DNA of 64,000 nucleotides from Paragordius varius (Eukaryota > Animalia > Nematomorpha): NCBI GenBank assembly GCA_964247055.1, contig OZ176059.1:2418001-2482000 (forward strand). The letters are read 5' to 3'. The position numbers were made by a program, and so were the translations under genes. The notes under the pieces were generated by a model that was not told where the DNA came from, did not search any database, and was given only the letters and a program-made list of their open reading frames with translations. Of the stretch, positions 3,240 to 50,200 are shown piece after piece (the stretch's first letter is position 1; every line of letters begins with the position of its first letter).

Positions 3240-4916
3240 ATGTGTCATAAAACAGACTTGTTACAGGGATACGGATTGTTGGTTGATATTCCACTACTTT
3301 TAAATCCTATTTTGCATAAATTATATACTTAATAATTCGCACTCATGTAAGAATCCAAAATAAAACAGTATAAATTTTTTACACATTCATAAACCAGATG
3401 ACAAAAAAATGTAAAAATATAAAACAATATTTTTTGGTTTTATGTTGATATATAAGTTTTTTTTACTGAATAAAATATGGATGTTAAGATTTTAATAGTG
3501 AGTTTAGGTAGTATAAATATAGTATCATCAAATATTTTTTTTAAATGTGTCAAAAGAAAAACGCCATCTTTTGAGCTTAAATTATATAGAAATCCTAACT
3601 ATATGATTTTAGGCTATTGAAAATATCTCCTAAAATGATAATAAACTATAATATTTCAAATTTTATCATTATTTTTTGATTTACCCTAATTTTCACTTTT
3701 TGCCCGATTTCGATTTTCTCTCAATATTTCAAAAACCAGGTTGTTAGCAAATAAAATTTTTTTCGGCAAATGAATACGCTGGTCATTAGCTATCTCACAA
3801 AAAAAAATTTTCGTTAAATCAAAATGACCCGCTTATATATATATATATATACATATATTGTGTGCAAAAACAGAGGGTTAATTTTTTTAACAAAATTTTT
3901 TTTATCATGAGATAGCTTATAACAAGTTAACATTTGCCGCAAAACTTTTAATTTGTTGACGACCTAGTTTTTGAAATATTAAGAGAAAATAGAAATAGGG
4001 CAAAAAAAATTAATAATTAAGGATAATTTAAATAATAATGATGTTGAGATATTATCGTTGATAATCTATAAAACTATAGAAAATAATTTTTTTAATTATT
4101 TACTTTCTAAGCTAACTATTAAAATGTTAACATTCATATTTTTTTCAAAAAAATTTCTATGTCAAAATAAAACTAAAAATAGTGTTTTTTGTAATCTGGT
4201 TTATAAGTTTATGAAAAATTTATACTGTTTTATTTTGGAATCTTAAATGAGTGGGAGTTATAAAGTATATAATACATGCAAAATAGATTTAAAAGTAGTG
4301 GAATATCAACTAACAATCCGTAGAAATCCATGTACAGGTTTATTATAACACAAATTAATAACTGGGATATGTACAGATATTTGGTTGTTCCGCTAATTAA
4401 AAATTCTATTTTGCATAAAATATACACTTTATAACTTCAATTCATGTAAGATTCCAAAATAGAACAATATAAATTTTTTGCACACTCATAAACCAGATGA
4501 CAGAAAAATAAAAAACAATATTTTTTAGTTTCATTTTGTCTTAGTAGTTTTTTTAACCGAATAAAATATGAATGTTAAGATTTTAATAGTGAGTTTAGCT
4601 AGTAAATAATTAAAAAAATTATTTTAATATAGTTTCATAAAATTAATTAACGTTTAAGTGCGTTAAGAGAAAAACGTCATTTTTTGAACTGAGATTTTAT
4701 GGAAACCCTATTTATATGATGGCTATTTATATGAAAATACCTCCTAAAATGATAATCACCCAACTATAATTATTTTTTGAATTATCCTTAATTTTCATTT
4801 TTGCCTTATTTTGAATATCTCTTAATTCAAAAACTAGTTCATAAATAAATATAAAATTTATAGGGCAAATGAATACGCTGGTTAAGCTATCTCATGAGAA
4901 AAAATTTTTTTGCCAC

Positions 4917-9647: not shown

Positions 9648-12600
9648 TTATTTTTTCGCAAAACCGGGGATAATAATATTATATATACAACATTTCCTTG
9701 CAGAAATATATAATCCTTATCATTTAATATTTATTTAGGGAAAATTAAATATTCAATTTACCTCGGAAGCAAATTCCAATTGTTGTACCATTTCATCACT
9801 TGATAGCGAGTTGTTACGTGTTGACCATGGTCTTTTGTTTCTATATATATATATATATAACAATTAACAACGCATCTTATAAAGCATTAACCACTATAAA
9901 CCAAATGGCTACAGATTTAATAGGAATTTTATTTTTTATACAATTTTAAAAAAATGCATTGGCAAAAATATATATCACACCGAACAGAGCGATATAAAAA
10001 TAATTTACCGAAACACAATTTTCGGGTCCCAATCTCTACCTTTTTAATATAAACACTTAAATATATTATTATGATTCAATTAAATTTGGAAGCTTTGACA
10101 ATATTATGTAACTTCACAAAATCTAATTAAAACAGTGATGATAATTTAATTCAGATAAATTATAAGTAAAGAATCAATAAGTTGTCAACTAATTTAATTT
10201 CTTTTGGTTTTCACTGTTCTGAATCATTTATTCTCCCCTCTAAATCCCAAAATAAAAAAACCAGTGAATCAATAAAAAATCATATAATTGGATATATATA
10301 TAGTCATGTATCCTTTATTTTCTCAAAAATTTTTTTTCGTTAAATGGGTATATATATTTGGTAAAGAATGGAAAAAACAAGAGCTATATGGTATTTTTAT
10401 ACTTTTTGATCAATATGATATTGTTAATACCATAGAGCTCTTGTTTTTATCCATTCTTTAACAAATATTTACACCCATTTAAAGAAAGAAAATAAATTTT
10501 ATAAAAAATAAAGGATAGACTGTATGTATTTATGTACAAAAGTAATTTTAATCCTTTCTTACTGTTTAATCAAAGATAGTGATGATGATGATGTAACGCA
10601 CATGGTTAGCGGATCATTTTTACTGACCTGTAACATTGACAACCGGTTTTCCGTCATAACCGGTGTTTCATAACCGCTATTAATAGAAGAAGCGGGTAAT
10701 ATTCGATTACTTACCCCTAGAGCTTTAGCATGTAAGGGTGGCTTATTATTCGTAATAGCTTTCTGTTTAACGTTCTTATCTCGTTGTCGACTGCATGGTT
10801 GTGGTATATTATTAATATGATTATTGGGGCTAGGTTGCAGTATAAAACAAGATTTTGGTCGAGCCGTAAGTATAGGGGGATGTTCACGCATTATATTGTG
10901 GGGCGTCTTTTTATCTTGTATATACAGTTAGTGTGAGTAAAGTAATAAATTGGGACTTTTTTCCCTAATTTTTGCCAGAAGGCATTAATAAATACGGCAA
11001 AGGGCAATATAATTGGCAAATAATTTTTTTTATGTTTATTACTGGATATGCTATCTAGCATATCTGATCAAATAAAAACTGGCAATAGACTTTCATTCAT
11101 ATTATATATATATATATATATATATATTGTGTGTGTTAATATGTTTTGTTAGATATTAATACCCTATTAATATGTTTTGTAAGATATTAATACCCTAAAA
11201 AATAGTTTACTAACAGTCCAAAATCCGACAAATAACAATTTTATATTATTTTACTATAAATAAAAAAAATATAATCCAAACATGGTTAACAGATCTTTAA
11301 TCTCTTTGTAAAAAAACTGCAATATTATTTAAGCGCATAATTAGTCTTAAATATGTTTGCTGTATAAATTAACTTTTGAATCGTCTGCGCTAAACATAAA
11401 TGAATTTATCATATTTTATTTTAATTCATTTCGATCCAGTGTTTTACACATAAAAGAGATTTTTAACTGTATATACCTCCTTTGAATTGGTCCTTTGTAT
11501 CAATGGACGATATAAAATTAATCTCGGGTCCAAGGCTGTTATCACTTTTTGGTGAAGGAAAACATACATAATTTTTGCTCTTTGGGAGGGTGCTATTGTT
11601 TCTTTCACCAATGTTTATAATGCCGCGAGTATCATGAAATATAGGGTTTGTAATGATACTCGATTGTACCTTATCATCAATGTTATGGTGTTGAGGAGTA
11701 GTTGTAACAAATAATGAAGAATATGATGATGATGATGATGAGTCAACACTATTTTTATGAGTGTCCTGCTTTTTATCATTATCATAATGGGTTGTTTTAA
11801 CATAATTTTGTGTTGGTAATTTCAGTACTATGTTAGTGGCTGTTGAAACGCGCCTATTAAATAATAAGCCATCATTAATGGGAGAAATATTCGTATCTGA
11901 AGCGCATGTAGGCACCTTTTGGGGATCCCTAAGTATAAAACCATTGTAAACGTATGTTGTTGATGGCTCAATAGTAGTATTACGTTGTGATGATGTTGAA
12001 ATAGTACCAGTATTTGTGGTTGAAGTGTTAGAACTGGTTATTAAGGCTATTACTTGGGAATTTGAATTAAACTTATTGTCATTAAAGTTATTTGTAAAAC
12101 TATCCTTTTCAATCTTCTTGGAACTTGTCAAGGGATCATTAGAATTATTAATTAATGGTGAATGAGTTGTGGTAGGATTATGAGAGGACGGACACCCAGG
12201 CCTTGTAGGTGATTCTAAATGCGTTATAAATACGTTAATATCCTTGTTTTTGGGTTTTCTTTCATTAACGGTATCATTGGTAGTTGCGTTGGAGAGATGC
12301 CTCTCAGATATATTTTGTGTGTTAGATTCCCATAAACGATTGATTTCAGATAGAATATCGTTTTCATTGCTAATGTATGGTGGATTTGTCTCAATTACAT
12401 CCAAATGCTTACTTGGACAGGTAGGTAGGCAAACAGTGTCAACATATGCGCCGTTGTTTTGCTTTAAATTATTGTCATTATTAACATGATTTGTACCAGG
12501 GTAATCGATTTTAGGTTCATATTTAGACATTTTATCATTATTTATTTTGGGGCTTTTGTTTGATAAGTTATTTAAAGGTCCAGTAGTATCATTTTTATCA

Positions 12601-15600
12601 CAATAAATCTGTTTACCCATGCCACTAGTTTTGGGAAACAACGATGAAACAGACAATGGCGAAAGTGGGAATAAAAATTCCCCTAAATCATCGGCCGTAT
12701 TTGCCCGAGTGTAACGAGTAGATACACTATATCCTTTAACTCTGTTTGTATTCGGGGAAGAATCATTACTTTTACTAAAAATATTATAAGTATTAGGATC
12801 ATCTCTAACAAGTAAAACATCCTTATTATTATTATTGTGGTTCTTGTCAACAATATCATGATTATCATTTTTTGAAAGATTGCCATTCGGAGAAGGGCCT
12901 ATTTGCATAGAACTAAAAGAGCTTTTATCATTTTCACATGATAAGGACGTGTGATTTTTAGCTTCGTTTTTAGTTATATCGAGCTGTATAGGTCCACACT
13001 TACGCCGAAGTGAGCACCGAAGTTTAGCCAATAACGATGTTTTAGCTGATGGGACATATCGGTTCCTATGAAGAGGAACGGATGACTGATTCTTGCTTTC
13101 ATTAATGGTACAGTCATGTGGTTTGTTGCAAAGATTATCTAATGGTGAATCATTTCCAAAAGTATATAAGGATGATGAAATATTAGGGTTTGATTCTGTG
13201 GTCAAATTAGTTTGAGTGTGACCGATTACATTGCGTTTCTGAGTTTTTGCCAGGAAAACCTGCATTTTTGACATATCAATCATGTTATTACAAACAGGTG
13301 CGGAATTACAAGTTATAATATCAAGGTCATCTGTGACAAGATTATTCTTAATGGTACTTTGTGAAAATACATCATCATTCTCTAAAGGAGCTAATTGGTC
13401 CCCTTTATTGTTTGTATGGCTTTGAGATGATAGATTATTATTATTATTGCTACATGAATGTAACATAATCATGGATTGACTCATTTTTGACATGACGTTC
13501 AAAAAGGTGCGATTATGACCCCTTTTCGCGTTAGTACTGGTGACTAAGTCAGAACCATTGTTATAACATATGTTGGCATAAGGGCGAGACATACTGTCAG
13601 TTAAACTACTTAAAAATTGAGGAAAAGGACTCTCAGTGTTATTATTAGTGATGATCACGTCTTTGGAAATTGTCAAACGTTCGTCCTTAGGATATTGATC
13701 ATGTGACCAAAAATCGCTAAGGGAACATGATTTCTTATCACAACGATTGGAATTATTTAAAATATCAGGCGGTGCATAAGGATACGAAAGTCTATCACTA
13801 CACAATAAAAGCTGACTATGAGTTACAACATATTGACTGATATCATTAATATTATTGTTGTTGTTTTTATTAAAATGATTATATACGTTATTAGGGCAAG
13901 CTTCTGTAATGTTCGCTGATGTCATATTTTTATATATTAATCGTCTGTCTAACAGACTTTGGCCATCATGTATCGTCTGCTGATGGGAGTTATCGGCTTC
14001 GTAACATGGTTGATTCGAAGTATGTAAAGATTTGTCATGTTGTGTTTGAATCGGAGTATGTATCGGAACCGGTTTAACAAAATTTTCACTAGTACTAGTA
14101 CCCTTTACGGGTTTTAGCGAAGTTTCCTGGCAGGTAATTTTTTTGGTTTTATTATTAGCTGCTAAAAAAGAGGTGGTTGAATGCATATAATTGGTTTCTT
14201 CTTCTGTGGATTTATGTTGATGATGTTTCAAATTCGATGATTTAACCAAATTTTTTTTGCGATTACTGCTATTATTTTTATTATCGCTTAATGTAGTGGT
14301 ATTGCTATTCCCACCACCTCCAAACCGAAATAATGAGCTTAAAGAAAAATGGAATTGACTGGTACAAGTTTGTGGCTCAGGTACCTTATTAACTTTTTGT
14401 TGTTGAGGTGAAAACTTGGTAGAAGGAATTATTTGATCCTTACATTGATTTTTAGGAAGGATTGAAGTTGGAGAACCACTAGTAAATACTGGATTATAAG
14501 TAAATGGATTCATATTCAAAATTCTAGTAATCACTGATTCCGAATGAATTGGTTCATTGTTTTCGGGAGAAAGGTTCAAAGAGACATCATTGAATCCTAT
14601 AATTATAGAAATATTATTTATTTATATAACTGCCAAAAAATGTTGATGTGAAAAAGTATATTTTATGCATCATTTTACCAAATTTTAATATTATACATTG
14701 GTTAAAATTAAACGAGTGTCTGAAATAAAATTATATGTACTGACCATTATTCACCTCCTCATGGCCATCATCAAAATTTGCAGAGGTGGTCCTTTTTTTA
14801 AATGAAACCATTTTCATTTCTTGTATCAATTGATTGATTTTTGGATTTTGACAATGACTTGAACTGTAATCTATACATGCATAAGTAGGATTTTTAGTTT
14901 TAGAATATTCTTTAATAGTTCAATATTATTAATTTTATCCAGCCACCACAGCTAACAATTTTACTATTCATATCTGAAATAATATATAAAGATAGCATTA
15001 ATCATACGCCGAGAGTACTTTAATAATTATATATATAATATATACAAATAGTTTTAAATTCGTTGCACTAACAAATTATTATTGTATTTAATAAAAATAA
15101 AAAGAGAGCCAAAAATATTCATTTAAATTGTTATGTTGAAAAAATTTTAATACATGCAATTTACATAAATTATAAAACCTGTTTTTGGGGTTTTGGGAGA
15201 CTGGGTTGAGATAAATTCGGGATCACCTAAATTTAGGTATAATTATTATATATGAAAATCCTTACTCATTCGCAAATATTCATCGTTAATTAATATATTA
15301 GTTTTGTAATAATATTAATATAATGAGCTTAAAATTCTATTCTATGCGTTGTTTTGGATATAGCCATGGAAAATGGTGAAATGAAACAAAATTGAAAGGA
15401 TCTAATCTAATGGATACCAAGTTTATTAACGTTATCACATGATTTACAACCAGAAACATCGCGCTGAGAAATATCCAATATTTCTAAAAACTCTATGTAA
15501 AACAACTTCCATATATGTTGTTGAAAAATGGACGCACCAATTTAGTTTTATATATAAAAAAGAAATATATTTAATCAATTACCTAAGAAACAAGAGATGA

Positions 15601-34435: not shown

Positions 34436-37400
34436 ATGATGATTCATTTTGGTATACAAATCATTACAGTTTATCATTTATTTTGGCTTATATTAAGTCA
34501 GGAGCCTAGATCAGAACCTGAGGGTATTATTTTCTTCAAAAAATATTTTTCATTTATCATTTAATTTAGTTTGCACTAATCCTATACCTCGTACGTGCCA
34601 ACATGGTTTTACAACAAATAATTTGGGATGTCCGACCTGTCAATGCAGTGAGTATATATTTAAAAAATTGAACTTACAATAAGAATTAAAATTATACGGA
34701 CAAAACTTCAAAATAGACAGACAAATACTTTTTCAAAATTGAATTTTTTCGTTATTTCAATCGCACAATATGAAATATAAATGTCTATGGTAATATATTC
34801 AATTAAATAATTTACGTTTGCATATAATAGTTTATGGAAAATAAATTACGGATGAAAAAAACATGGTTGTCTTTTGAAAAAAAAACATTTGTCTTTATGT
34901 TTTTACGTTTTGTCCGAATCAAATTCAATTTTTTTGCTTTATTTTAAATTATATTTTCTTTACCGATTATTTTATAATTTTTAATTTTTTTATCCATGGC
35001 TTAAAAACGGTTAAAAAATTTAATATAATTAAAATGGGTTTTCATTCCATAACTTTTGAGTTCATACAATTTTAGCCACTGCTTTATTAAACTATCGGTT
35101 TTTGTTGGATTTTATGAGGGTCGGAGAGTTAAAAATTAAAATTTCAATAATTGTGGTTTTGGTTACACCCAGATTTTTACCATAAATTTTAAACGGTTTC
35201 AACCATAAATTAGTGAGTATAAAAAATATTGCTAAGGTCAAATAATATTGCAGTGTTTAAACTAGATTAAATGTAATACATTTAAAATTATAATATTGTT
35301 CTTTGGATTCAATAAATTTAAGATATTTAACATTTTGTAAATTAAATATTTAAGGATGCCCGCATATCTCTTGTTCAAACACTTGTGTGGGTGATCATAT
35401 ACCGGATGATTATGGATGTCCAACATGTCAATGCGGTATTTTTTCTAAACTTGTTGATTTTTTTTGATCTACGATGCTTAAAAATATTAAATATGAACAT
35501 AATATGAGGGTCAGTTTTATCGATTACACATTTTAAATAGCATATACTTTATACAATAAAATAAAATTGGAAATTTTAATTGACACCTTAAAAACATTTT
35601 TAATTGCTTAATTTTATGTATATGATATTTATAACCAATATTAGACCCACTTTATTCTTAGTTTTGGCGGCTATTTTTACAAATATTTATACCAATGTCC
35701 AACACGCCTCCCGCGGTTCACATGCGGCAGACTTTGTAAAGGCCAGCGAAATACAAAATTCCATAATTCACAAGAATATACTAACAAAATCATATTTTAT
35801 GAAGAATATTTCGAATAAGCTATCCAATTAGCAAAAACTAGAAAATATGGTTTTGCATTTACAGTCTTATGTTTGAAATATATTAAATTTTTATGAATGG
35901 CCGTATATCTTATAAATGAAGCCCGCGAACCCATTTGTGTTGGAGATCCTTGGTTTAAAAGTATTCAATATACACTCTTTTTTATAATTTTTTTTTATTG
36001 TAAAATATTTTTCTTGGCGACACACATTGGTCAAAGCCTCTTGTCATAATGGGTCATATGGCATTTTGTCATAAAATTGTTAAAACAATGGACAAATGGC
36101 ATGCATGATGTATATTTCATTACAAAAATAGAGCAATACTCTAAAATTGTGCTTATATAGTTTTGAGATATACTGTTTCAGATTAACAGCCTATTTTATT
36201 TAATAGTCATTACACAAGGTTAATTCTATGTAAACAGTGTTCATATCGTAATGGTTAACACCGGATTGGTTATGTTTTGTAATAACAGTTGTTAAAATCC
36301 GTAATATAACGATAAAGGATAATTAAATAGAATTAAATGAAAGTATAAATAGAAATTAAGATTTTTACAAAACTAAAACTTGTATCATTAAGATCATCTT
36401 TCTCTAATATTTAAGCAATTGGGGGTATCTGGACTTCTATTTATATATTTTGATTAATGTTTGGAGAGCCAATTTCTTTTTTTCTAAGGGATCGATGTTT
36501 TAAAAAATAGTGCTGTTTTGAGAACAGTGGTGCACCATAAAATTTTTAAAGGGCCACTAAGATTATTTTCTTAAAAGCCATAATACCGATAATATGTTCA
36601 TAGTCTTTGACACATTTGCAGATATTAATAATCTAATTCAGTATTATATCAAAAAATTTAATAAATAATTTAGGACCATAAAAAAGCGCTTTTAGGACCG
36701 CGGCTAATAAAAATACTTAGACGGATTTTTTTGAAATCAAAACGGTAGCAGAATGATTAAGTAATAGGTATAACGTAAAAAAACTATAGCACATTCATTG
36801 AAGGACAAATTTTAATTGTTGGTATCATATACCGAATTTTACAAATGGAATTACGTATCTGTTTCCCAACAGACAAGCTAAACGAGGATTCATTTTTTCA
36901 ATTAAAAAGACGTTTATGTCTTAAAAAGTATTCCATATTCCTTATATTATGCTAAGACTTTGATTCTTTTTTTGATAATTTACAATTGATTGATCCTCTT
37001 GTCTTGTTGCTTTGAAATAAATAATCATGCATAACCATACACCACTTTAAATCGGTTAAGATTTGATAATAGTCTAAATTTTTAAGGGGTCACATACCGT
37101 CCTTAATTGTTTCTGGAAACTTTAGGTTTTTCAAATATGAGATTAAACTTTGTAAATTTTATCCATAAGATTTTTGTTGTCCTTTTGTCAATTTTGTCAT
37201 TTATTTATCTCAATCCTGGTCATCGCAATTTTATTATAGGAAGATAATTTATTTTATACCATTTCACTAATTCTTCCTTAAACAATTCAAATTGACCCTA
37301 AAATAAATTACATATTTTTTAAGATTAATTTTTATTTTTATAAAATGAAATTTATAAAATTAAAATATTACTGAAAAAATAAAGTAAGCCATTGTGATAT

Positions 37401-40400
37401 ATTCATATTGATAATAAAGAGTTATATTAGCCCGAAAACACAATTTATTTTAGGGTGAATTAGAATTGTTCAAGGGTGAATGAATTGTTTAAGGGTTGAA
37501 TTGTTTAAGGATGAATTTGAATTGATGTGATAAAAACTCTTTGGTGTGCCTGGTATATAACAATCATATTATCCTTTAACAAATTTATATCAATATAAGA
37601 TGACACAAGTTTATTATATGAAGTTAAAGATATTCACAAACTTATTATATGATGGTTTTTTGATAAGATAAAATAAAATTTTAAGCTAATCAATAATCTT
37701 TTAAAAATAATTAATAGCATGCCCAAGCATATCCTGTCCGCCTGGCCTAACATGTCCAAACGGATTTCAAACCGATTCCAATGGTTGTCCCACTTGTAAA
37801 TGCTGTAAGTTTATCTATATATGCATATGCTTATTACAAACTGGTACAGTTTTTCGTTTCATTTAGTGAGTTCAAGAGTGTCCTTGAACTCAAGTGGTTC
37901 TTGACACTTTTATTGTGTTTTTACTCTTATCAATCAAACCGTGTATTATTCATCTATTCATTTTTAACCTATACTTTTGATTTAATATAAACGTTAAAAA
38001 TAATCAACTTTTAATCATTCAAAAACCGTGTGGTAAAATCCAAAAATAAAAATTTTAAGGACTACTTAAAGTGCTCAAGGACACTTTTGAATTGCAAATG
38101 GTTTATCTTAATTATCGGTTTCAGCTTTGACTATTTTTTTTTTTTGGGGGGGGGGGGGGGGGGAGAAAATACGGTTGAAAAATTAATAGTCCTTAATTTG
38201 GCTAAAAATGTTTCTGATCTATAATTCTGATTTTAGTCATTTTTTTCCACTAGAGTTTACTGACTTATTATCATTATGACGATTATACCATTAGCCTCAA
38301 AAATGACAATGTTAAATAAAATACTTTTGCCGCCGAAATATTTCTGCAATCCGCTAGAAATTTCAAACACAAACATTTACGATATCTGAGCAAAATTGTT
38401 TTTTTAAGAAAGTCTTTTGAATTAAATCTTTCTGAATTTTGATGAGCTAGCGAAAATTGTTAAATAAATTATACTACAGTTTCGCGTTTAAAACCTAAGA
38501 AAATATTCGTTAATGCCTATTGATTTTGCGAATGCAGCCCATCGACATTTTTCAAACCAAATATGTCGCCCGCGAGGCCATTTAAACGGCTTTGTTCAAA
38601 CTTTATGTAAATGATTGCGGAAATAATGAATATATTTCATTATTCAGATTGAAAAAAAATTAAAGCATAGTTTAAGACAATTTTAAATTTTTCGGCTTAT
38701 TTCACAATTTAAGGAACTAATTGAGGGGTGTATAAAATGTACTGCATCAATAAACACCCAAAATATGTTTCTATTATAGTAAAAATTCAAGTTATAAACG
38801 TAAAATTGAAAAGACAAATATTATTTTAACAAAGCCAACTCGAATAGGGGTAGTCAGAAGGTCAAATTAAATATTTTAAAAAATAAGGAATAAATATAAA
38901 CCATGGCAAAAGTTTGTATTTGCGTAACATTGATGAATCGAAATATAGAGAAAATTCACTCAAAAATACTTGATATTACTTATACAAAGGTAGTAGCATA
39001 ATTTTAAATTGGAACCGTTCAATGTTTTTTTAAAATATCAACTTAAATATTGACCAGGGTATTTAGATACCCCTTCTTGAATCAAAATGTTAAAGCGTTT
39101 ATTTTTCTTACATAAATTCTATGATTTACGTAATTAATTCTTTTTTTGCAACATAAAACAATAGATTCTGATAGGTTAAAAAAGAATTTTAGTCTCCTCT
39201 ATTCATCATTTTCTTGGGGAATCTTATACCCCAGGACCATTTAAGTTTTAAATATATTAAAAAATATTTTTTCCCCAATGTTAAATTTTAAAATATGCTT
39301 ACTTTAGTCACATATGTCTAATACAAATTTTAGTTTTTTGCTCCTTTTTTTCAATCATGACAGACATATACATAAATATTATAATTAAAATATATAAATT
39401 ATTAACTATGAAAAGCTTTTACTAACAATTTACCGCAAATTTTAGATATTTATTGATTTAAATATCAGCTGTTTGTTTCAATCCTTGGAGCTATCTGAAT
39501 TTGTAAATGATGTTGGAATCGTCGTAAAATAACGCAACTTATATTATATATATTTTTCTTAACTAATCTCCTGATGATGCCTATGGCGAAAATTGAGAAT
39601 TGTTAAGTTATATTTTATTTTTGCGTTATTTTACGACTCATATTATTATACTTCATGGTTTATTGAGGCAATTTTTTAGGTAACACATGCCCTTGTGTAC
39701 AACTAATGATTTTACAGATCATTACCAACAAACGCTGGACTACATCAGGGTTCAGTCCTAAGTCCACTCCTTTTTATTACTATAATGGATGCGGCAACGC
39801 AAGACATAAGAAGTGAATGCCCTTGGGAAATGTTATTCGCCGACGACCTCGTGATAACGACACGATCATGGGATCAACTGGTAAATACATATTCCAAGTG
39901 GAAGAAATGCCTTGAACAATATGGAATGATCATAAACGCCACAAAAACAAAAATAATGATAACGGGTGAAAGTGAAACACCCAGATACCCCTGTTCCATT
40001 TGCAGTAAGGAAGTACGTTCAAATTCCATTAAATGCATATCATGTCAATTGTGGGTACACAAAAAGTGCTCTAAAATAAAAGACAAGTTAACAAATGTAA
40101 TAAATTTTAAATGCTTAAATTGCTTAGACCCAAACAATAATAATTTTAATCGACCAAAGCTACTTAACATTGATGGACATGACATCGAATTGGTTGACTC
40201 TTTCGTATACCTAGGAGATGTCATATCATCTCAGGGAAGCCCACAAAAGGCTATCAAAAGAAGAGTACAACAAGGTTGGATAAAATATAATCAATTAAAA
40301 TATGTTTTCCAAAACAAAAATGTTAACAATCGTAATAAATGGTATCTTTACAAGGCAGGAATAAGACCTGCTCTTACCTATAGTTCTGAAACCTGGGCAT

Positions 40401-42547
40401 TAAACAAAACAAATCAAACAAAACTCCTAACCAGTGAGAATCGAATACTCAAAAGCTGCTTTCGTACACAAGAAATACCAATTTTCATTAAAGAAAACGA
40501 TAAAATCGATTATATAATTCAAACAGATTGCGTCTCTACGGTCATACTCAGAGAAAAGACGCCACCCATCCTTTAAAAACTGTTGATAACATTAATGTTG
40601 ATGGCAATAGAAGAAAGGGACGACCACTCTTTTCTTATAATGATAATATAAAAATGGACTTGAATCAACGTAGCCTTTCCACAGAACAATGTAAAGATCG
40701 TAATTTATGGAGGAAACTACTTCGTGGATACATAACTCCGAATATAGAGTCCTAAAATTATCCATCCATCCATTTTACGACTCACAACATCATTTACATT
40801 ACGAACCCTCGTCGTTACCCACTCAATTATATCTGAGTTTGTTTTAGAAGTCATAAACTGTAAACTTTTACTGTTTTTTATAAACAAGATGGTTTTAATA
40901 ATAAAATATCAACAGCAAAACAACTTTAAAAACAATAGTTTGAGTACTACTTTAAACAGACTTTTAAAACTACCTTAAAATGTCATTTCGAACCATGAAA
41001 TGAATATGTAATCAGGAGTATGTAAAAAAAATTTGTTTTTTGGCGTTTACGTTTTATCATTATGATATTATATATATATATATATATCTAGTGTGTCCCC
41101 CGTTTACATGTCCGGGTATATCGTGTCCCCAAGGCTTTCTTACAGACGCCAATGGATGTCCCCTTTGCAGATGCAGTTAGTTATTTTTTCAACATTAAAT
41201 TTATTATTTTCGTTCATTTAAGTGATCATGAATTTTTTTATAACAATCAAATAAAATAATTACATTATTAAAAAAATAAATTTTTATGTTGAAAGGGTGC
41301 CCGAATGTATCATGTCCCTTGTTCTGTCAACAAATTACTGGTTCAAATGGTTGTCCCGTGTGCGATTGTATAAGTAATTTTTTTCTTTAATATTATAAAG
41401 TAAAAACTAAAAAAGTTTTTAGATATAAGTTTTAAATTGCTAATACACTAATCAATATATTAAACATTTTATTCATAATTTTTACATCAGGGTTAAAAGA
41501 GAATGGTTTTTTAAAATATTTCTTTAATTTCGTTTCCCTATAATTTGAATTTTAATCGTACGTTTGTTTTTATTTAAATATTTGATTCGTCATTCAATCA
41601 TATGTTAACATTTTTACTGCTTGGTTTAACACTTGGATACAACACACTCATTTTAGTCCGATTCAAATTGGGGTAGTTGGATACCCCAGGCCTGTTTAAA
41701 ATCAAATACTTTAAAAAGTATGGAAGGAATCGGAACCATGACAAAATTTTGCACTTATATAACATTAATAAACCGAAATATATAAAAAATTTTATTCAAA
41801 AATAATTGATATTACTTATTTTGAGCTAAAACTGAAAGGTAAAAATTTAGCCAACGTGACATGTGTCGAATTGTAATTAAAAAATAATACAAAATAAACC
41901 GCTTTTTCTATTTCTATCAATGTTAAATATAATTTATATAAAACATAAGCTTTAGTTTTACCCTTAAAATTAAATGAAGACGATATTTTGCAAAAAAATA
42001 AAAATGGCGTCGAAGTAGTTTGAGATGGAACTTTTTTTCAAAACAAAATTTTATCAAGATATTTTGGCATATTTATATAAAATTTATCAGGATAAAAGCA
42101 TGAATTTAAATTGGGACCGTTTCCTTCAGTAGTTTTTTAAAAATTTTAATTAATTTTTTAGTCTGGGGTATTTACCCCAATTTGAATCGAAGTGTTAAAA
42201 TACGAATGCACAACATTCAATACTTTATGTGCGGGTCAAAAAATTATATAATTTGCATAAATGTTCCCACAAAATCTTTTTTAAATTGATATTTATACAA
42301 TTTTTTAAATACGTATATCCTATTGGCAAGAAGAAATAGAGACAAATGTTATATTGTGTTTTCATTTTACAGTTTATGTATGAAATATAAATAAATCATT
42401 ATGGATGCCCATATAAATTTTGCATACGGTCCGCTAAACGTTTGAGTAAAAAATGCGGCCTGTAAAGTTATGTTAACTACCCCTGGTTTAAAAGATCAGA
42501 ATGGTGATTATTTTATGGACAGAATATCGGAAGCTAATTTTTTTAAA

Positions 42548-42594
<47 letters not shown>

Positions 42595-44076
42595 ATGTAT
42601 ATAATACCATTTAAATAAAACTGTTAAAAAAATAATTGTATTCTTTTATCAATGTCCAATTTTGACTGTAAAATGAATACTGATTGGATATTAGGTGGTT
42701 GTCGCTGTCCCATAAGATGTCGAACATTCACAAGGCGATTTGATCCAGATCGATGTCCGCCCTGCTGTTTTGAATGTAAGACATTGTTTTAAAACTTTGA
42801 TTTAAAAAAGTAATTATTCATTTTTTTCCTATTTTGAAAATATAATTTAATATGATAATGCTTTTATTGATCCTTAGGGTTATATCATTAAAGAATTCCT
42901 TTTATAGGCCCGTTTTTGAGGTCATGTAAGAATAGGCGATAAAAAACTCAAAAGTATTGGTAGTCACCAAAAAAATTTTTTAGGACCTGAAAAATAATTA
43001 TCTTGACTCAAGGGTCGTGATAAATTTTTATAGCTGTTTGATACGTGAGATATTTAATAAATATTTGGGGCCACTGAAAAGTTTTAGGGCCCGGTTGGCC
43101 ATTAGTCTGAAGTAATAATTTATGTATTATGATTGAATGTGAAAATACCAGCTAGTGTTTAAAAAATAAGCATTTAGACCCCAATTCCTTACAATTAAAA
43201 CATTAAAATATTTTTAATTTCTTTCAAAGGACTTAAATATTTCCGATAACTCTTATGAGCAGCTAAGTGTTGAAAATCGAGTTTTACCTTATTCATAGAT
43301 TTAATGCAAAATGACGTAGTATTATTTTTTTAAATTTTGCAAATTGTTGTTTGTCCAATACTATATATATATATGACACAAACTGAATTATACATATATA
43401 AAAAATAGCTGTATTTATTATACAAATTAAAAATGGTAATATTTGTGTGTAATATTTATATTAAATTTCATCACCTTATGGGGTAGCTTTATACACCAAG
43501 GCCATTTAAATTTTTTTATCTTAAAAAAGTTTTTGGCTTCGGGCCTTTAAAAATATGCTTTCTCTACCCGTTTAGTGGCATACTTAAATACTTTGTCTAA
43601 AAATTATAAAATTTTAAGAATTCCTTCAAACATTTCCGCCTCCATTTTTTTATTTTTTTAATCTTGAATACAACAGGCAAATAATTGTTATAAACTTAAA
43701 TAACTTCGAAAAGCTTTTAAATAACAATTTACTTGTAAAAATATTTATATTTATCGATATTATTATCAGTTTTTTGCTTCTATAATGTTATAGTCCTATC
43801 CTAGGGACTATAGACGTTAAAAAACTGTAGACGTTTCAAGTTTATCATTATACACAGGATCCAAGGGTTTGATAATTAAATTTTAAGCAAAACGACTTTT
43901 AAGCTTACTACTTTAAGCGATGGGGTGGAAAAATCCCCCATAATGTCATCACTTACAAAAATTTTAAATGATATATAGTGTCGCTATTTATACATTATTT
44001 TATAGTATTTTCTCCAGATGAAATAATTGAAGGGGGAAGTGGAGGTAATAACAATAATACTACCAACACTGTATGA
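34436..44076 (+). CDS. Secreted multi-antistasin-domain cysteine-rich protein (~211 aa; signal peptide, 5 antistasin-like modules and 1 atypical Cys module)
   Basis: Exons 34436-34523 (MMIHFGIQIITVYHLFWLILSQEP..., hydrophobic leader), 34570-34647, 35355-35435, 37718-37804, 41092-41175, 41296-41373, 42695-42775, optional 42908-42925, 44018-44076 (TGA; AATAAA at ~44083). All introns are GT-AG and phase 1. Modules such as CPSISCPPGLTCPNGFQTDSNGCPTCKC fit the antistasin consensus CxxxxCxxxCxxGFxxDxxGCxxCxC. Confidence 0.88.
34690..34920. mobile_element. MITE family with ATACGGACAAAAC...GACAAATA...GACAACCATAC arms; further copies at ~47400-47950, 59130-59400, 61995-62280, 63625-64000
   Basis: Recurrent inverted blocks AATTATACGGACAAAAC / GTTTTGTCCGTATAATT and AAAGACAACCATAC / GTATGGTTGTCTTT. 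Confidence 0.65.
37872..38092. mobile_element. MITE whose termini are related to the fold-back element at 59455-61620
   Basis: Inverted ends TTCAAGAGTGTCCTTGAACTCAAGTGGTTCTT / AAGGACTACTTAAAGTGCTCAAGGACACTTTTGAA. Confidence 0.65.
39641..40771 (+). mobile_element. 5'-truncated RTE-clade non-LTR retrotransposon (reverse transcriptase remnant with PHD-like Zn finger), in intron 4 of the antistasin-like gene
   Basis: GLHQGSVLSPLLF...MLFADD RT motifs and C-terminal LRLYGH...GRP. (ATCC)n 3' tail. 13-bp TSD ATTTTACGACTCA at 39628-39640 and 40772-40784. Frameshifts near 39720 and 40530-40570. Confidence 0.92.
41630..42194. mobile_element. piggyBac-like MITE with TTAA target sites; related inverted partial copy at ~29040-29350
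   Basis: TTAA at 41626-41629 and 42195-42198. TIR CACTT...CGATTCAAATTGGGGTA...TACCCCAG mirrored at the right end. Confidence 0.65.
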
Positions 44077-45492
44077 CACAATAATAAACCTGCAATCAAA
44101 TTTGCAATAATATAGACAATTCAATTTCCTTTGATTTATTGGCTCCGAAAAACTACAGATATCATACATTAACCAATATCCTAAAATAAATTAATTCTTA
44201 TTATGCATAATATATATAAATTATGTCCTTATAAACTGGGTAGTATTTAATATGATGCCGTCTGTGTGAAAATACATAAAAATGGAATATAAGGGACTAA
44301 TAATGAAATATAATTTTGATATAATCGTTTACAATGTAAATAAAAATTAGTTAGTAATTTATTTCGATACAAACGTTAGTAATTTTTTAAAACTCACTGT
44401 CAAACTTTTATAATTTATTATAATTATTTTTTTCTTATCATTCTTTTGGGGGCAGTTTTCTTACTTAGAGCAATTAAAAATGTGAATATATTCAAAGAAT
44501 TTTAGATATGGGGCCCAATTTTAAAATAAACATTTTTAACCTGTTGAGCGCCTGATTTAAAAAAAAATTTATAAAATGCCAAATTGTAGGAAACTCAAAC
44601 TTTTTCGCCACTAGATTATTTGTAAAGAGTTAATGCAAAGGCCAATCATGTATTGTGGGTAAAAAATGTAAATCAAATTAGATAACATTTTTACAAAAAT
44701 TGCACCGCAAATTTGTCTATATTTTTGATAAAAAAGTCAGCTGCTTATTCAGTTTGGTTTTGGAGACATGACTAAAAAGTGCAAAATATATAACTTTTTA
44801 TCAAATAAAGTAAATATTTTTAAAATTTAAGTGAAACAACCATTAAAACACTAGTTTCTTAAAAGATTTTGCTCCTGGCTACAAAAATACCCCAAAATGT
44901 ATTATCACCCCCAAAAAATGATAATCAGGTGTTTTATATTTTAAACTGTTTTCCACCCTAATAATATCTGCTATGAAGTTATAATATATTTCAAAATAAG
45001 GCGCATATATTTACATCCATAATAACTATATTTTACCCATCATATATTTAAGAATTGTCCCAATATATTGCGTTAAAAATTATAGCCGTATAATTTTTGC
45101 AACAAAGCGGAATTGACTTTTAATTTCTACAAAAATCTATATAAATAATTCAATGTAGGTAAAAGAGGTTTATACATCAAGCACTGTTGATGCTTTTTTT
45201 CTGCATCGAACTGTACACTATGAGCAAGTGTATTTTGCTAAAAATTTATTAGCCAATAATACTGCCCTTTGTTGCATAGGCTATTTGGCAATAAATAATA
45301 ATTTTCTAGCAATGTATACTTACCAAAACGTAATAATATTAAAAAACGTTTTAGATTATAAAAAAGAATATTTTTAAATATTACATTTTCCATTTTTTTG
45401 TAAAAATTGACTTGGAAAATATAAAAAAATCTGTCAGCATCAAACTCTTGGTTGGTAGACCCGCGCTTTGAGATACTCATTCGAATTTCAAT

Positions 45493-47271: not shown

Positions 47272-50200
47272 CATTTCCTGTATTGATAAGTTTGAGAGAC
47301 GGTTACTAATTTGAAGAAAGGTATAATAACTAAAATTGAATTGATATGGACAAAACATATACAAATATAAAGACAAATATTTTTTTTCAAAAGACAACCA
47401 TACTTGTTTAACTTTAATTTTTCCTATATAAACTATGTATAATAAAAATTGTAAAATATTTAATTGATTATGTTAACATTATACATCGCTATTCTTTACT
47501 TTTCAATTTTAAACAATGAGTTAAGGATTTTAAAAAAGTATGGTTGTCGTTTAGAAAAAATATTTGTCTTTATATTTTAACGTTTGGTCCGTATAATTTT
47601 TATTTTTATTATACCAGTTTTAATTAACTAATTTATGCACTTATCAACCATTAAACAGTTTGTATTTTAAAAACCTATAAACACTTTTATAGTAAAAAGT
47701 GAAATTATGCGGACAAAACGTTAAAATAAAAGGACAAATATTTTTTTATAAAAAACAACATTTTTTAAATCTAGATTTATATTTGAATGGCAAAGTGTGA
47801 AATAGAGATGTCTAACACTAACACAATCAATTTTATATTTTACAATTGTAACTAAATAACGTTTCAAAAGTATGGTTGTCTTTTAGAAGAAATATTTGTC
47901 TTTAAATTTTTATGTTTTGTCCTCACGTATAATTTCAATTTTTACTGTACAAGACCGTGTATGACTGACCGCATGTTAAAGCGGTTATTAGTCCGGTTAT
48001 TGTATATTTGCATCGGTAAACTTGGCTTGATATAACCGGTTATAACTGTTTGTTTACATGCAACAATTAGAGCAGTTATGGATATTGGGTAGCGGTCTAA
48101 AACCCGATTGTGAGATTTTTCATATTTGCGACCTTATCCGATTATTTTTTGATAATTGTTAAAAGTTTTGTTATTTATTAAATGGTGTTATGATGTTTTT
48201 TACAACGGGTATCGTTGGTTATAACTGTTGTTTGTGTAGTGTTGAGAACCTCGTTATTATTCATGAGATATTAAACCGGATGGTATCAATTGACTAGTTA
48301 TAACTGTCATTTTTTTCTTCAAAGTAGTAATCAGATTCCGTTTTATTAATTTTAACATAAAATATATTCTATTCATTTTTATTACATTCCAAATTATAGC
48401 TAAATTGTTTGTTGGAATGTCGTTTCAAAGTTGGTCAACGCCTTGAAGTGTATGATCGTGATGATATTTCAGCCATGAGACCAGCTATCATATCTGAGAT
48501 TCAAGGATGTCGCTTACGACTTCAATACTTACGTAGGGGTCGTGAATGGCCCCGTTCAACTAACATAACGAATTTACCTCATCCCAAAGGTTTTTTTGGT
48601 TTTATCATACTTTTTTTTTCATTCTTCACATTACTTATATCGCTTTTTTTAAATAAAAATTACTTGAAAATATTGGTCTTTTATCTGTTTTTAATATTTT
48701 CATATAAATTGAAATATATAATGTTTAATATACAAGGCTATAATGGTTATGACTTTGATTCTATCTTGTAACTTAACTGTGATGTATTTAGATGGGCTAA
48801 ATAAGTTTTTTACTTAATTTTTGACATTTTTTTGATTTTTAAACCAGTGATGTCCGACAACACGCTTTTTTCGGTATACAAAACTGCTTTAATAAATAGA
48901 TGTTAAAATAATTGAAAATGTTGTATAACAATCAAAAATTTACGATTATTTAGAGGATATATAATCCAAAATTAGGCTCGGGCTCAAGATTAAAAAATAA
49001 TAAATATCAAATCGGCCGTGAAGATATTTGTGTTTGACATCTCTGGTTTAAATGCTAAAATAATTTTAACTTATAAGTCCATACTATTAATACGGGTTTA
49101 AGATAAATTTTATTTAATTACCATAAGCATATATAGTATTTAGCGATCAGTCAGTTATAACTCCATTACCCTCCCCCCCGCCCCCCTTTAAAAAAATTAG
49201 TTTTTAGACCAAGTGTTCTACTAAACTTTTTATGTTTAGATATAAAAGAGGATGTTGATCCTAACACTGAAGATTTTTGGTGTCATGCAAATTCACATAA
49301 TATACACCCTGTTGGCTGGTCCCTTGTTATTGGACATCGTATTAATGCTGATAAAAGTTAGTGAGTGTGGTTATGAAATTTTATTGCATATAGTTTTTTG
49401 CAGAAAAAGGAAAGGAAAATTGTTTATTATTTAACATTTTGTTATATTTTTTCCATACACTACTGTCCTGTGTTGCAAATTGCCCTACTATAGTGTTGTG
49501 AAATAACCATTTACTGTATATAGAAATTTTGTTTTATATAATTTTTTACAGGGAAAAAAGAAAGGAAATTGTTTATTATTCAACATTTTATTATTTTTTT
49601 CCATACACTACTGTCCTGTGTTGTAAATTGCCCTACTATAGTGTATGTTAAATAAGCAATCATTATAATGCATACTATATATAAAAATTTTATTGCATAT
49701 AGTTTTTTGCAGATAAAAAAGGAAAATATTGTTTATTATTCGACATTTTGTTATTTTTTTCCATACACTACTGTCCTGTGTTGCAAATTGCCCCCTACTA
49801 TGTGAAATAAACAATCATTAAAATGCATACTATATTTAGAAATTTAGTTTTATATAATTTTTTGCAGATAAAAAGGAAAAAATTTATTCAACATTTTGTC
49901 ATTTTTTCCCATACACTACTGTCCTGTGTTGCAAATTGCCCTAATATAGTGTATGTTAAATAAGCAACCATTAAAATGCATACTGTATATGTATATATCA
50001 TTATAGAATATATGGTAGAATCCAAGAAATTTTATTTGAATCGCCAGGAAGATTTGTGTTCAGGGGGCCAAAATATCCACAATACCAATTCGTACGTTGG
50101 ATTCGCACCCTTTGAAAATTTTTGTTTGCCAAAGGTTATTTTATTTAACAAAGCTTGATAAAATTATTTAGTTAGTTTACACTTATATAATATTTAAGTA

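What the first reader, a model, noticed from the sequence alone, without database searches (positions are those of the whole stretch)
34436..44076. Secreted antistasin-repeat gene missed by the ORF track, one module per symmetric exon
Sequence: a signal-peptide exon, then six 78-87-nt exons, all phase 1/1, each encoding exactly one Cys module joined by single-residue linkers (CxC-x-C), then a Gly/Asn-rich tail. No exon appears in the ORF track. Established knowledge: antistasin (MEROPS I15) modules are serine-protease inhibitor folds known from leech saliva and also occur in structural proteins such as the Theromyzon cocoon protein. Inference: a gene built by exon duplication in which any module can be skipped in frame, allowing a combinatorial isoform repertoire; a candidate secreted effector or structural protein.
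Basis: partly seen in the sequence, partly recalled or inferred. Interest (0 to 1): 0.75.

Follow-up and report, generated by a model that had tools for sequence, protein, structure and literature searches.

The report
Six-module antistasin-like secreted protein gene
This is a real-looking, unannotated gene in a probable horsehair-worm genome. It encodes a small secreted protein made of six leech-type cysteine knots, one per mini-exon, a build already known from Hydra, snails and hydroids, so it is an ordinary new family member.

Summary
On the + strand there is an ATG exon with a hydrophobic leader. It is followed by six exons of 78, 81, 87, 84, 78 and 81 nt, all GT-AG and all phase 1/1, each holding one cysteine module. 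A short Gly/Asn tail exon ends with TGA and has AATAAA 7 nt downstream.

Four modules pass Pfam's Antistasin cut-off, one falls below it, and the sixth is only weakly alike. Exon G+C is 41-52% against 14-30% in the introns.

The genome (110 Mb, probably a horsehair worm) holds at least 62 such module exons. One is part of a five-module paralogue of identical design, and this scan had already noted several similar genes elsewhere in the genome.

Signal peptide plus six 25-28-residue antistasin repeats is the published Hydra antistasin architecture. It is also annotated in Hydractinia and Biomphalaria. Phase 1-1 module exons are the classical exon-shuffling pattern.

The residue at the inhibitory P1 position is Ser, Pro, Pro, Pro in modules 2-5. 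A classical multi-headed protease inhibitor is therefore unlikely, and a disulfide-rich extracellular scaffold or binding protein is more likely.

In-frame skipping is arithmetically possible, but nothing supports it. No RNA evidence and no orthologue were found.

Verdict: new member of a known kind, low interest.

The parts
34436..34523 (+). Exon 1: start codon, hydrophobic leader (putative signal peptide) and a short polar stretch. It ends in phase 1 at donor GTATTA. An alternative phase-1 donor GTCAGG follows 34496.
   Evidence: There is an in-frame TAA two codons upstream of the ATG. Hydropathy peaks at 2.15. A paralogue's first exon has the same layout and a GTATAA donor, which favours 34523.
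34570..34647 (+). Exon 2, 78 nt, phase 1/1. Module 1 has 5 Cys; the second family cysteine is missing.
   Evidence: Pfam PF02822 28.4 bits against a cut-off of 21.2. Acceptor TTTAG, donor GTGAGT.
35355..35435 (+). Exon 3, 81 nt, phase 1/1. Module 2 has 6 Cys; the P1-equivalent residue is Ser.
   Evidence: Pfam 24.7 bits. Donor GTATTT.
37718..37804 (+). Exon 4, 87 nt, phase 1/1. Module 3 has 6 Cys and a five-residue C2-C3 loop; the P1-equivalent residue is Pro.
   Evidence: Pfam 42.3 bits, E 1e-10. The AF2 model has pLDDT 85.8, and its top fold hits are guamerin and hirustasin.
41092..41175 (+). Exon 5, 84 nt, phase 1/1. Module 4 has 6 Cys; the P1-equivalent residue is Pro.
   Evidence: Pfam 37.5 bits. 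Donor GTTAGT; the acceptor is preceded by a (TA)n run.
41296..41373 (+). Exon 6, 78 nt, phase 1/1. Module 5 has 6 Cys and a shortened middle; the P1-equivalent residue is Pro.
   Evidence: Pfam 16.0 bits, below the cut-off. It aligns with the family over all six Cys.
42695..42775 (+). Exon 7, 81 nt, phase 1/1. Module 6 is divergent and Arg-rich, with 6 Cys in altered spacing.
   Evidence: No Pfam match. hhalign to the family profile gives probability 25%. The donor GTAAGA is strong. Read-through would stop at 42790-42792.
44006..44076 (+). Exon 8: acidic then Gly/Asn/Thr-rich tail, stop TGA at 44074-44076.
   Evidence: The phase-1 acceptor follows a T-rich tract. The sequence is unique and not part of the dispersed repeat that ends near 43981. 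The join to exon 7 is inferred only.
44083..44088 (+). AATAAA, a candidate polyadenylation signal.
   Evidence: It lies 7 nt after the stop. Chance occurrence is not negligible in DNA of 26% G+C.

Best explanation
A single-copy nuclear gene of an AT-rich animal, probably a horsehair worm. It encodes a secreted protein of about 206-215 residues.

Shown:
- The layout is a leader, six directly abutting antistasin-like disulfide-knot modules of 25-28 residues each, and a short Gly/Asn tail.
- Each module sits on its own phase 1/1 exon, and the intron splits the one-residue linker codon. This is the expected trace of tandem exon duplication.

Inferred:
- The product is a rigid, disulfide-rich extracellular rod.
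- Modules 2-5 carry Ser or Pro at the position that is P1 in the leech inhibitors, and the modules hold 35 cysteines in all, an odd number. I therefore think it acts mainly as a scaffold, binding or cross-linking protein. That is the role proposed for CRIM1-type and cocoon, adhesive or shell-matrix antistasin repeats.
- It is probably not a classical multi-headed serine-protease inhibitor.

Odds, given that the gene is real: roughly 45% scaffold or binding protein against 30% inhibitor.
For: - Pfam Antistasin is above the cut-off for four modules, and the same exons are recovered in the genome-wide scan.
- GT-AG boundaries, uniform phase and in-frame closure hold throughout. Exon G+C is 0.41-0.52 against 0.14-0.30 in the introns.
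- Cysteine codons differ synonymously between modules while the cysteines are kept.
- A five-module paralogue on contig C6 has the same design: a leader exon in phase 1, then 78-nt 1-1 module exons. Of 39 paralogous modules, 25 have the same phase-1 acceptor.
- The AF2 model of module 3 (pLDDT 85.8) has guamerin, hirustasin and bdellastasin as four of its five best PDB fold hits, at 1.2-2.0 A.
- Six-module proteins of about 200 aa named antistasin-like exist in Hydractinia and Biomphalaria.
- The P1 position was mapped on guamerin. Ser or Pro sits there in modules 2-5.
- Pro at that position occurs in 13% of 777 modules of relatives, including CRIM1-like proteins.
Against: - No transcript, orthologue or database protein matches the spliced product. 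The library of 1.84 billion proteins gave no protein collinear with the exons.
- The leader is only moderately hydrophobic and has no basic N-region.
- The exon 7 to exon 8 join and the exon 1 donor are ambiguous.
- Introns of 1.2-3.3 kb are long, so a split into two genes cannot be excluded.
- The only biochemically established activity of this family is protease inhibition. Arg sits at the P1-equivalent place in the two aberrant modules, 1 and 6.
Confidence: 0.7

Rival explanations
1. It is a classical multi-headed, standard-mechanism serine-protease inhibitor. As is assumed for Hydra antistasin, each module would present a reactive loop, here perhaps aimed at host or own protease cascades.
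For: - Family membership and the same six-repeat architecture as Hydra antistasin (PMC7851590).
- Paralogous modules in this genome carry Arg, Lys, Met or Leu at P1.
- Arg is at the P1-equivalent place of modules 1 and 6.
Against: - Modules 2-5 have Ser, Pro, Pro, Pro at P1. From established work on canonical inhibitors, cited from my own knowledge, Pro is among the worst P1 residues.
- Modules 3 and 4 have lengthened loops.
- Module 1 lacks the cysteine that anchors the loop.
- The modules lack the N-terminal four-cysteine subdomain of the leech inhibitors.
Confidence: 0.25
2. The exons do not form one gene as drawn. They may belong to two or more transcripts, or the leader or tail exon may be wrongly assigned. 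For example, the gene could end by read-through of exon 7 at 42790-42792.
For: - Introns 3 and 4 are 2.3 and 3.3 kb long.
- Since all exons are phase 1/1, phase cannot discriminate between joins.
- Read-through of exon 7 gives a stop after five more codons.
- Other ATG/hydrophobic/phase-1-donor candidates exist in the introns.
Against: - All six modules lie on one strand within 8.3 kb and nowhere else in the 64 kb.
- The GTAAGA donor sits exactly at the module end.
- The alternative leader candidates overlap exons out of frame or lie in TA repeats, and they are about as frequent as in control DNA.
- AATAAA follows the tail stop, but no AATAAA follows the read-through stop within 150 nt, only one ATTAAA 95 nt downstream.
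- The paralogue shows the same leader-plus-modules design.
Confidence: 0.15
3. It is a decaying or silent family member, that is, a pseudogene.
For: - Module 1 has lost a cysteine, module 5 is shortened and module 6 is barely recognisable.
- No product is in public protein sets.
- Transposon fragments lie in the introns.
Against: - No stop or frameshift occurs in any exon, and all fourteen splice dinucleotides are intact.
- The exon/intron G+C contrast is strong.
- Five-cysteine repeats are known in functional antistasins (PMC6719055).
Confidence: 0.07
4. It is a combinatorial isoform generator. Regulated skipping of single module exons would produce a repertoire of secreted variants.
For: All 28 forward exon-exon junctions are in frame and stop-free. 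Several donors depart from GTAAGT: GTATTT, GTTAGT and GTAATT.
Against: - This property follows automatically from 1-1 exons and is shared by most modular extracellular genes.
- GTAA and GTAT donors are the norm among paralogues, so these sites are not demonstrably weak.
- There are no RNA data.
Confidence: 0.07

Closest known systems
Hydra antistasin (Holstein et al. 1992, as described in PMC7851590), with the annotated 'antistasin-like' proteins of Hydractinia symbiolongicarpus (XP_057307790.1, 198 aa) and Biomphalaria glabrata (XP_013074753.2, 215 aa)
   Same: A signal peptide is followed by six tandem 25-28-residue six-cysteine repeats, about 200 residues in total.
   Different: - No orthology: module identity is at most about 70%, and no protein is collinear with the exons.
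- Linkers here are mostly one residue, against 1-5 in those proteins.
- The Hydractinia modules carry Lys, Arg, Ile or Thr at P1, whereas here it is Ser or Pro.
- This gene adds an Arg-rich aberrant sixth module and a Gly/Asn tail.
Leech antistasin-type inhibitors (antistasin 1SKZ, hirustasin 1BX8/1HIA, guamerin 3BG4, bdellastasin 1C9T; MEROPS I15)
   Same: The same six-cysteine knot. Sequence hits are 1skz at E 4e-4 and 3bg4 at E 0.002. The fold hits superpose at 1.2-2.0 A.
   Different: The leech inhibitors have ten cysteines per domain, with an extra N-terminal four-cysteine subdomain, and a basic or hydrophobic P1. Neither feature is present here.
Antistasin-like repeats of CRIM1-type proteins (e.g. 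the CRIM1-like protein of Gigantopelta aegis, XP_041355414.1, 958 aa, 20 matched stretches)
   Same: It is the best-scoring relative in the big search. Many of its modules have Pro after the second cysteine.
   Different: It is a much larger protein, and its relatives combine the repeats with other domains. Here there are only antistasin-like modules.
Theromyzon cocoon protein (Mason et al. 2004, via PMC7851590)
   Same: A six-fold repeated, antistasin-like, cysteine-rich structural secreted protein.
   Different: Its repeats are antistasin/notch-like fusions and are longer. No sequence comparison was made here.
Five-module paralogue in the same genome (G000 contig C6, about 5,464,990-5,467,830, minus strand)
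   Same: A leader exon ends in phase 1, followed by one module per 1-1 exon. It holds the closest module matches outside this gene, at 57-65% identity.
   Different: It has five modules, a stronger signal peptide and a different set of P1 residues.

Membership tests
Antistasin family (Pfam PF02822 / MEROPS I15) | HMM match above the curated cut-off (21.2 bits) | tested here: met
   Modules 1-4 score 28.4, 24.7, 42.3 and 37.5 bits. Module 5 scores 16.0, below the cut-off, and module 6 has no match. The genome scan confirms the same four exons.
Antistasin family (Pfam PF02822 / MEROPS I15) | Six cysteines spaced C-x4-C-x3-C-x10-C-x2-C-x-C, with Gly before the fourth Cys | tested here: met
   Modules 2-5 keep all six Cys and the Gly, with loop-length variation. 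Module 1 lacks the second Cys. Module 6 has six Cys in altered spacing.
Antistasin family (Pfam PF02822 / MEROPS I15) | Fold of the C-terminal subdomain of hirustasin or guamerin | tested here: inconclusive
   The AF2 model of module 3 has pLDDT 85.8. Foldseek ranks guamerin, hirustasin (twice) and bdellastasin among the top five, at rmsd 1.2-2.0 A over 25-28 columns. E is 0.6 or more because the domain is only 30 residues.
Antistasin-type standard-mechanism inhibitors (leech) | A suitable P1 residue (Arg, Lys, Met or Leu) directly after the second module cysteine | tested here: not met
   The alignment to guamerin places its loop residue Met, after the second Cys, opposite Pro of the consensus. 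That this residue is guamerin's P1 is from memory. Modules 2-5 have Ser, Pro, Pro, Pro.
Antistasin-type standard-mechanism inhibitors (leech) | A ten-cysteine domain with an N-terminal four-cysteine subdomain | tested here: not met
   The modules abut through one-residue linkers, which leaves no room for the extra subdomain.
Antistasin-type standard-mechanism inhibitors (leech) | Measured inhibition of a serine protease | not testable with these tools
   This needs the recombinant protein and enzyme assays.
Hydra-type six-repeat antistasin-like secreted proteins | A signal peptide plus six tandem 25-26-residue repeats, about 200 aa | tested here: met
   The exon model gives a leader, six modules of 25-28 residues and a 22-residue tail. 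The comparison set is P0024 and P0013 and PMC7851590. The signal peptide itself is inferred from hydropathy only.
Class 1-1 module exons (exon-shuffling type) | The domain is bounded by phase-1 introns on both sides | tested here: met
   This holds for all six module exons and for 16 of 39 paralogous modules with both boundaries in the simple test.

The most novel reading that the evidence does not exclude
In a host-manipulating parasite, this gene would yield a set of secreted isoforms by regulated skipping of single module exons. Alternatively, it would act as an effector on host extracellular protease or signalling cascades through non-canonical, Pro-loop antistasin modules.
Probability: 0.06. 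Interest if true: 0.6.

Novelty: new member of a known kind. Interest (0 to 1): 0.22.

Why it matters
It adds one well-defined, unannotated member to a large antistasin-like family, at least 62 module exons, in a phylum with almost no molecular data. No paper in the searched library links antistasin to Nematomorpha.

It is also a clean textbook case of domain multiplication by phase-1 exon duplication, with the intron inside the single linker codon.

It opens no long-standing question. The architecture is known from Hydra, hydroids and snails, and the scan had already noted several like it in this genome.

The only point of wider interest is why most modules carry Pro at the inhibitory P1 position, a trait shared with CRIM1-type repeats.

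Tried and rejected
- Spliced product or orthologue: I searched the 1.84-billion-protein library with module 3 (33 aa, by reference). It gave 171 hits. None exceeded 62% identity over its matched stretches (at most 19 of 27 residues, about 70%, for a single module) and none was collinear with the exons.
- Word search (search for homologous proteins): not used. Its length window (0.55-1.75x) cannot reach a protein of about 210 aa from any stop-free reference of 61 aa or less.
- Joined (spliced) protein: never built for a search or a fold.
- Close paralogues: DNA searches of the own genome found only intronic repeats.
- Intron-level duplication traces: none found.
- PDB phmmer with module 3: it gave spurious 'Pizza' repeat-protein hits through summed weak matches, which I disregarded.
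- Module 6 against the family profile: only 25% probability.
- A TATA-like string 11-19 nt before the ATG: too close to the ATG to mean much in DNA of 26% G+C.
- Organism identity by COX1: the word search was not run, because six TGA codons break the frame. Instead I checked for the nematomorph-type mitochondrial palindromes (PMC10380579).
Full report
**What is there**

The window has about 26% G+C. A scan of all six frames for cysteine-dense open stretches finds six on the + strand between 34.5 and 42.8 kb. The only other dense one in the 64 kb is a reverse-transcriptase fragment.

Reading the DNA around them and checking by script gives this model:
- E1 34436-34523, with an alternative phase-1 donor after 34496.
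- E2 34570-34647 (78 nt).
- E3 35355-35435 (81 nt).
- E4 37718-37804 (87 nt).
- E5 41092-41175 (84 nt).
- E6 41296-41373 (78 nt).
- E7 42695-42775 (81 nt).
- E8 44006-44076, with TGA at 44074-76 and AATAAA at 44083.

Every intron is GT-AG and every internal exon is phase 1/1. Exon G+C is 0.41-0.52 against 0.14-0.30 in the introns. A module regex hits four times in the window and never in 50 shuffles.

- The linker between modules 5 and 6 is three residues, not one.
- Module 1 has five cysteines.
- Modules 5 and 6 are sub-threshold and unmatched in Pfam, respectively.

**Domain identity**

Searched exon by exon, by reference, Pfam Antistasin (PF02822, cut-off 21.2 bits) scores 28.4, 24.7, 42.3 and 37.5 for modules 1-4, and 16.0 for module 5. 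Module 6 gets nothing.

Against solved structures, module 3 hits antistasin 1SKZ (E 4e-4). A profile of the six modules hits guamerin 3BG4 (E 0.002). The 'Pizza' designer-protein hits are summed weak repeats and are spurious.

I built an AlphaFold model of module 3 with 37 paralogous modules as its alignment. It has pLDDT 85.8. Its best PDB fold matches are guamerin, hirustasin (two entries) and bdellastasin at 1.2-2.0 A. The E-values are not significant for a 30-residue query.

Module 6 aligns to the family profile only weakly: hhalign probability 25%, with a C-x-C-x3-C...C-x2-C-C spacing. I take it as a degenerate derivative, not as proven.

**Genome context**

The assembly is 110.6 Mb in 44 contigs, and the window is C10:2,418,001-2,482,000. 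The Antistasin model finds 62 module exons genome-wide, a lower bound, and many lie in clusters.

The gene is single copy. DNA searches find only intronic repeats elsewhere. The nearest modules outside this gene are 57-65% identical.

A five-module paralogue on C6 has the same design. Its ATG leader exon ends in phase 1 at a GTATAA donor a few polar residues after the hydrophobic core. One module then follows per 1-1 exon, and the first of these is exactly 78 nt. Of 39 paralogous modules, 25 have the phase-1 acceptor at the same place and 16 pass both simple boundary tests.

By analogy with the paralogue, and because no paralogue donor starts GTC, I prefer the E1 donor at 34523 (GTATTA, 46-nt intron) over 34496 (GTCAGG).

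**Organism**

Earlier notes of this scan call it a probable horsehair worm. I tested this only partly. The mitochondrial contig (C44) carries COX1 with TGA codons in frame and long perfect palindromes. Such palindromes are published as typical of nematomorph mitogenomes (PMC10380579).

**Is the product known?**

The joined (spliced) protein was deliberately not built or searched. All searches were exon by exon.

The search of 1.84 billion cluster representatives with module 3 gave 171 hits at E of 1e-3 or better. None exceeded 62% identity over its matched stretches. No protein matched the exons collinearly. The best single-module identity was 19 of 27 residues. So neither this product nor a clear orthologue is in the public protein sets, and I have no RNA evidence.

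Transcript contigs and the gene structures of relatives could therefore not be examined.

Named relatives include:
- a CRIM1-like protein of the snail Gigantopelta (958 aa, 20 matched stretches);
- 'antistasin-like' of Biomphalaria (215 aa, six modules);
- 'antistasin-like' of Hydractinia (198 aa, signal peptide plus six modules).

PMC7851590 recounts that Hydra antistasin consists of six internal repeats of 25-26 residues. These share the cysteine pattern of the C-terminal part of leech antistasin domains. The architecture found here is thus a known one. PMC6719055 notes five- or six-cysteine repeats as normal in the family.

**Function**

In the guamerin alignment the residue directly after the second module cysteine is Met. 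From memory, this is guamerin's P1; antistasin Arg34 and hirustasin Arg30 occupy the same place.

In this gene that position is Ser, Pro, Pro, Pro in modules 2-5, and modules 3 and 4 have lengthened loops. Paralogues elsewhere in the genome show Arg, Lys, Met, Leu and others there. From established work on canonical inhibitors (my knowledge, not tested here), Pro is among the worst P1 residues.

Pro at this position is nevertheless common in relatives: 101 of 777 modules, notably in CRIM1-like proteins. It therefore marks a conserved and probably non-inhibitory module subtype.

The modules also lack the N-terminal four-cysteine subdomain of the leech inhibitors, and together they hold 35 cysteines, an odd number.

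My best reading is a secreted, rigid, disulfide-rich scaffold, binding or cross-linking protein. A classical multi-headed inhibitor is the main rival.

**Exon skipping**

But this follows from 1-1 symmetry, the classical mark of shuffled extracellular modules (Patthy, as cited in PMC3632108), and nothing indicates that it is used.

**Uncertain points**

- The leader is only moderately hydrophobic, and no predictor was available.
- The exon 7 to exon 8 join is inferred. Read-through of exon 7 would end the protein five codons later. However, no AATAAA follows that stop within 150 nt (only one ATTAAA 95 nt downstream), whereas AATAAA follows the tail stop by 7 nt.
- The tail exon is unique sequence just past a dispersed repeat.
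- Alternative leader-like ORFs in the introns are no more convincing than in control DNA.

**Verdict**

This is a real-looking, unannotated member of a known family and a known architecture. This scan had already met the same kind of gene elsewhere in this genome.

Noticed in passing
window 34675-34934 (intron 2): A repeat of about 260 bp that matches 100 or more places in the genome on both strands at 66-91% identity. It looks like a MITE-type palindromic element.
   Followed up: partly
window 39710-40573 (intron 4, + strand): A 288-aa open frame with the C-terminal part of a reverse transcriptase (RVT_1, E 3e-16), followed by a PHD-like zinc finger (below the cut-off). It is a 5'-truncated non-LTR retrotransposon fragment in the same orientation as the gene.
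   Followed up: partly
window 43450-43981 (intron 7): A dispersed repeat of about 500 bp with 40 or more copies at 66-76% identity. It ends about 25 nt before the acceptor of the tail exon.
   Followed up: no
window 41068-41087 and 42553-42606: (TA)n microsatellites. The first sits directly upstream of the exon 5 acceptor, where a pyrimidine tract would be expected.
   Followed up: no
window 48409-48560 (+): An exon-like open frame with a weak MBT-repeat match (19.7 bits, cut-off 22). It may be the next gene downstream.
   Followed up: no
window 11463-14579 (-): A 1038-aa open frame, Asn/Ser/Thr-rich and of low complexity. It was not examined.
   Followed up: no
L031 (G000:C44) 773-1472 and 53-314, 4064-4257: The mitochondrial contig has a tandem array of perfect palindromic units at about 72-bp spacing upstream of COX1, and zero-loop palindromes of 97-131 nt. 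This fits the hairpin-rich mitogenomes reported for Nematomorpha.
   Followed up: partly
P0137 and P0112 (big-search hits, ENA metagenome contigs): Antistasin-like modules occur in proteins that look bacterial: lipoprotein-like leaders and Gly/Thr- or Cys/Asp-rich regions. They are among the best single-module matches to modules 3 and 4.
   Followed up: no
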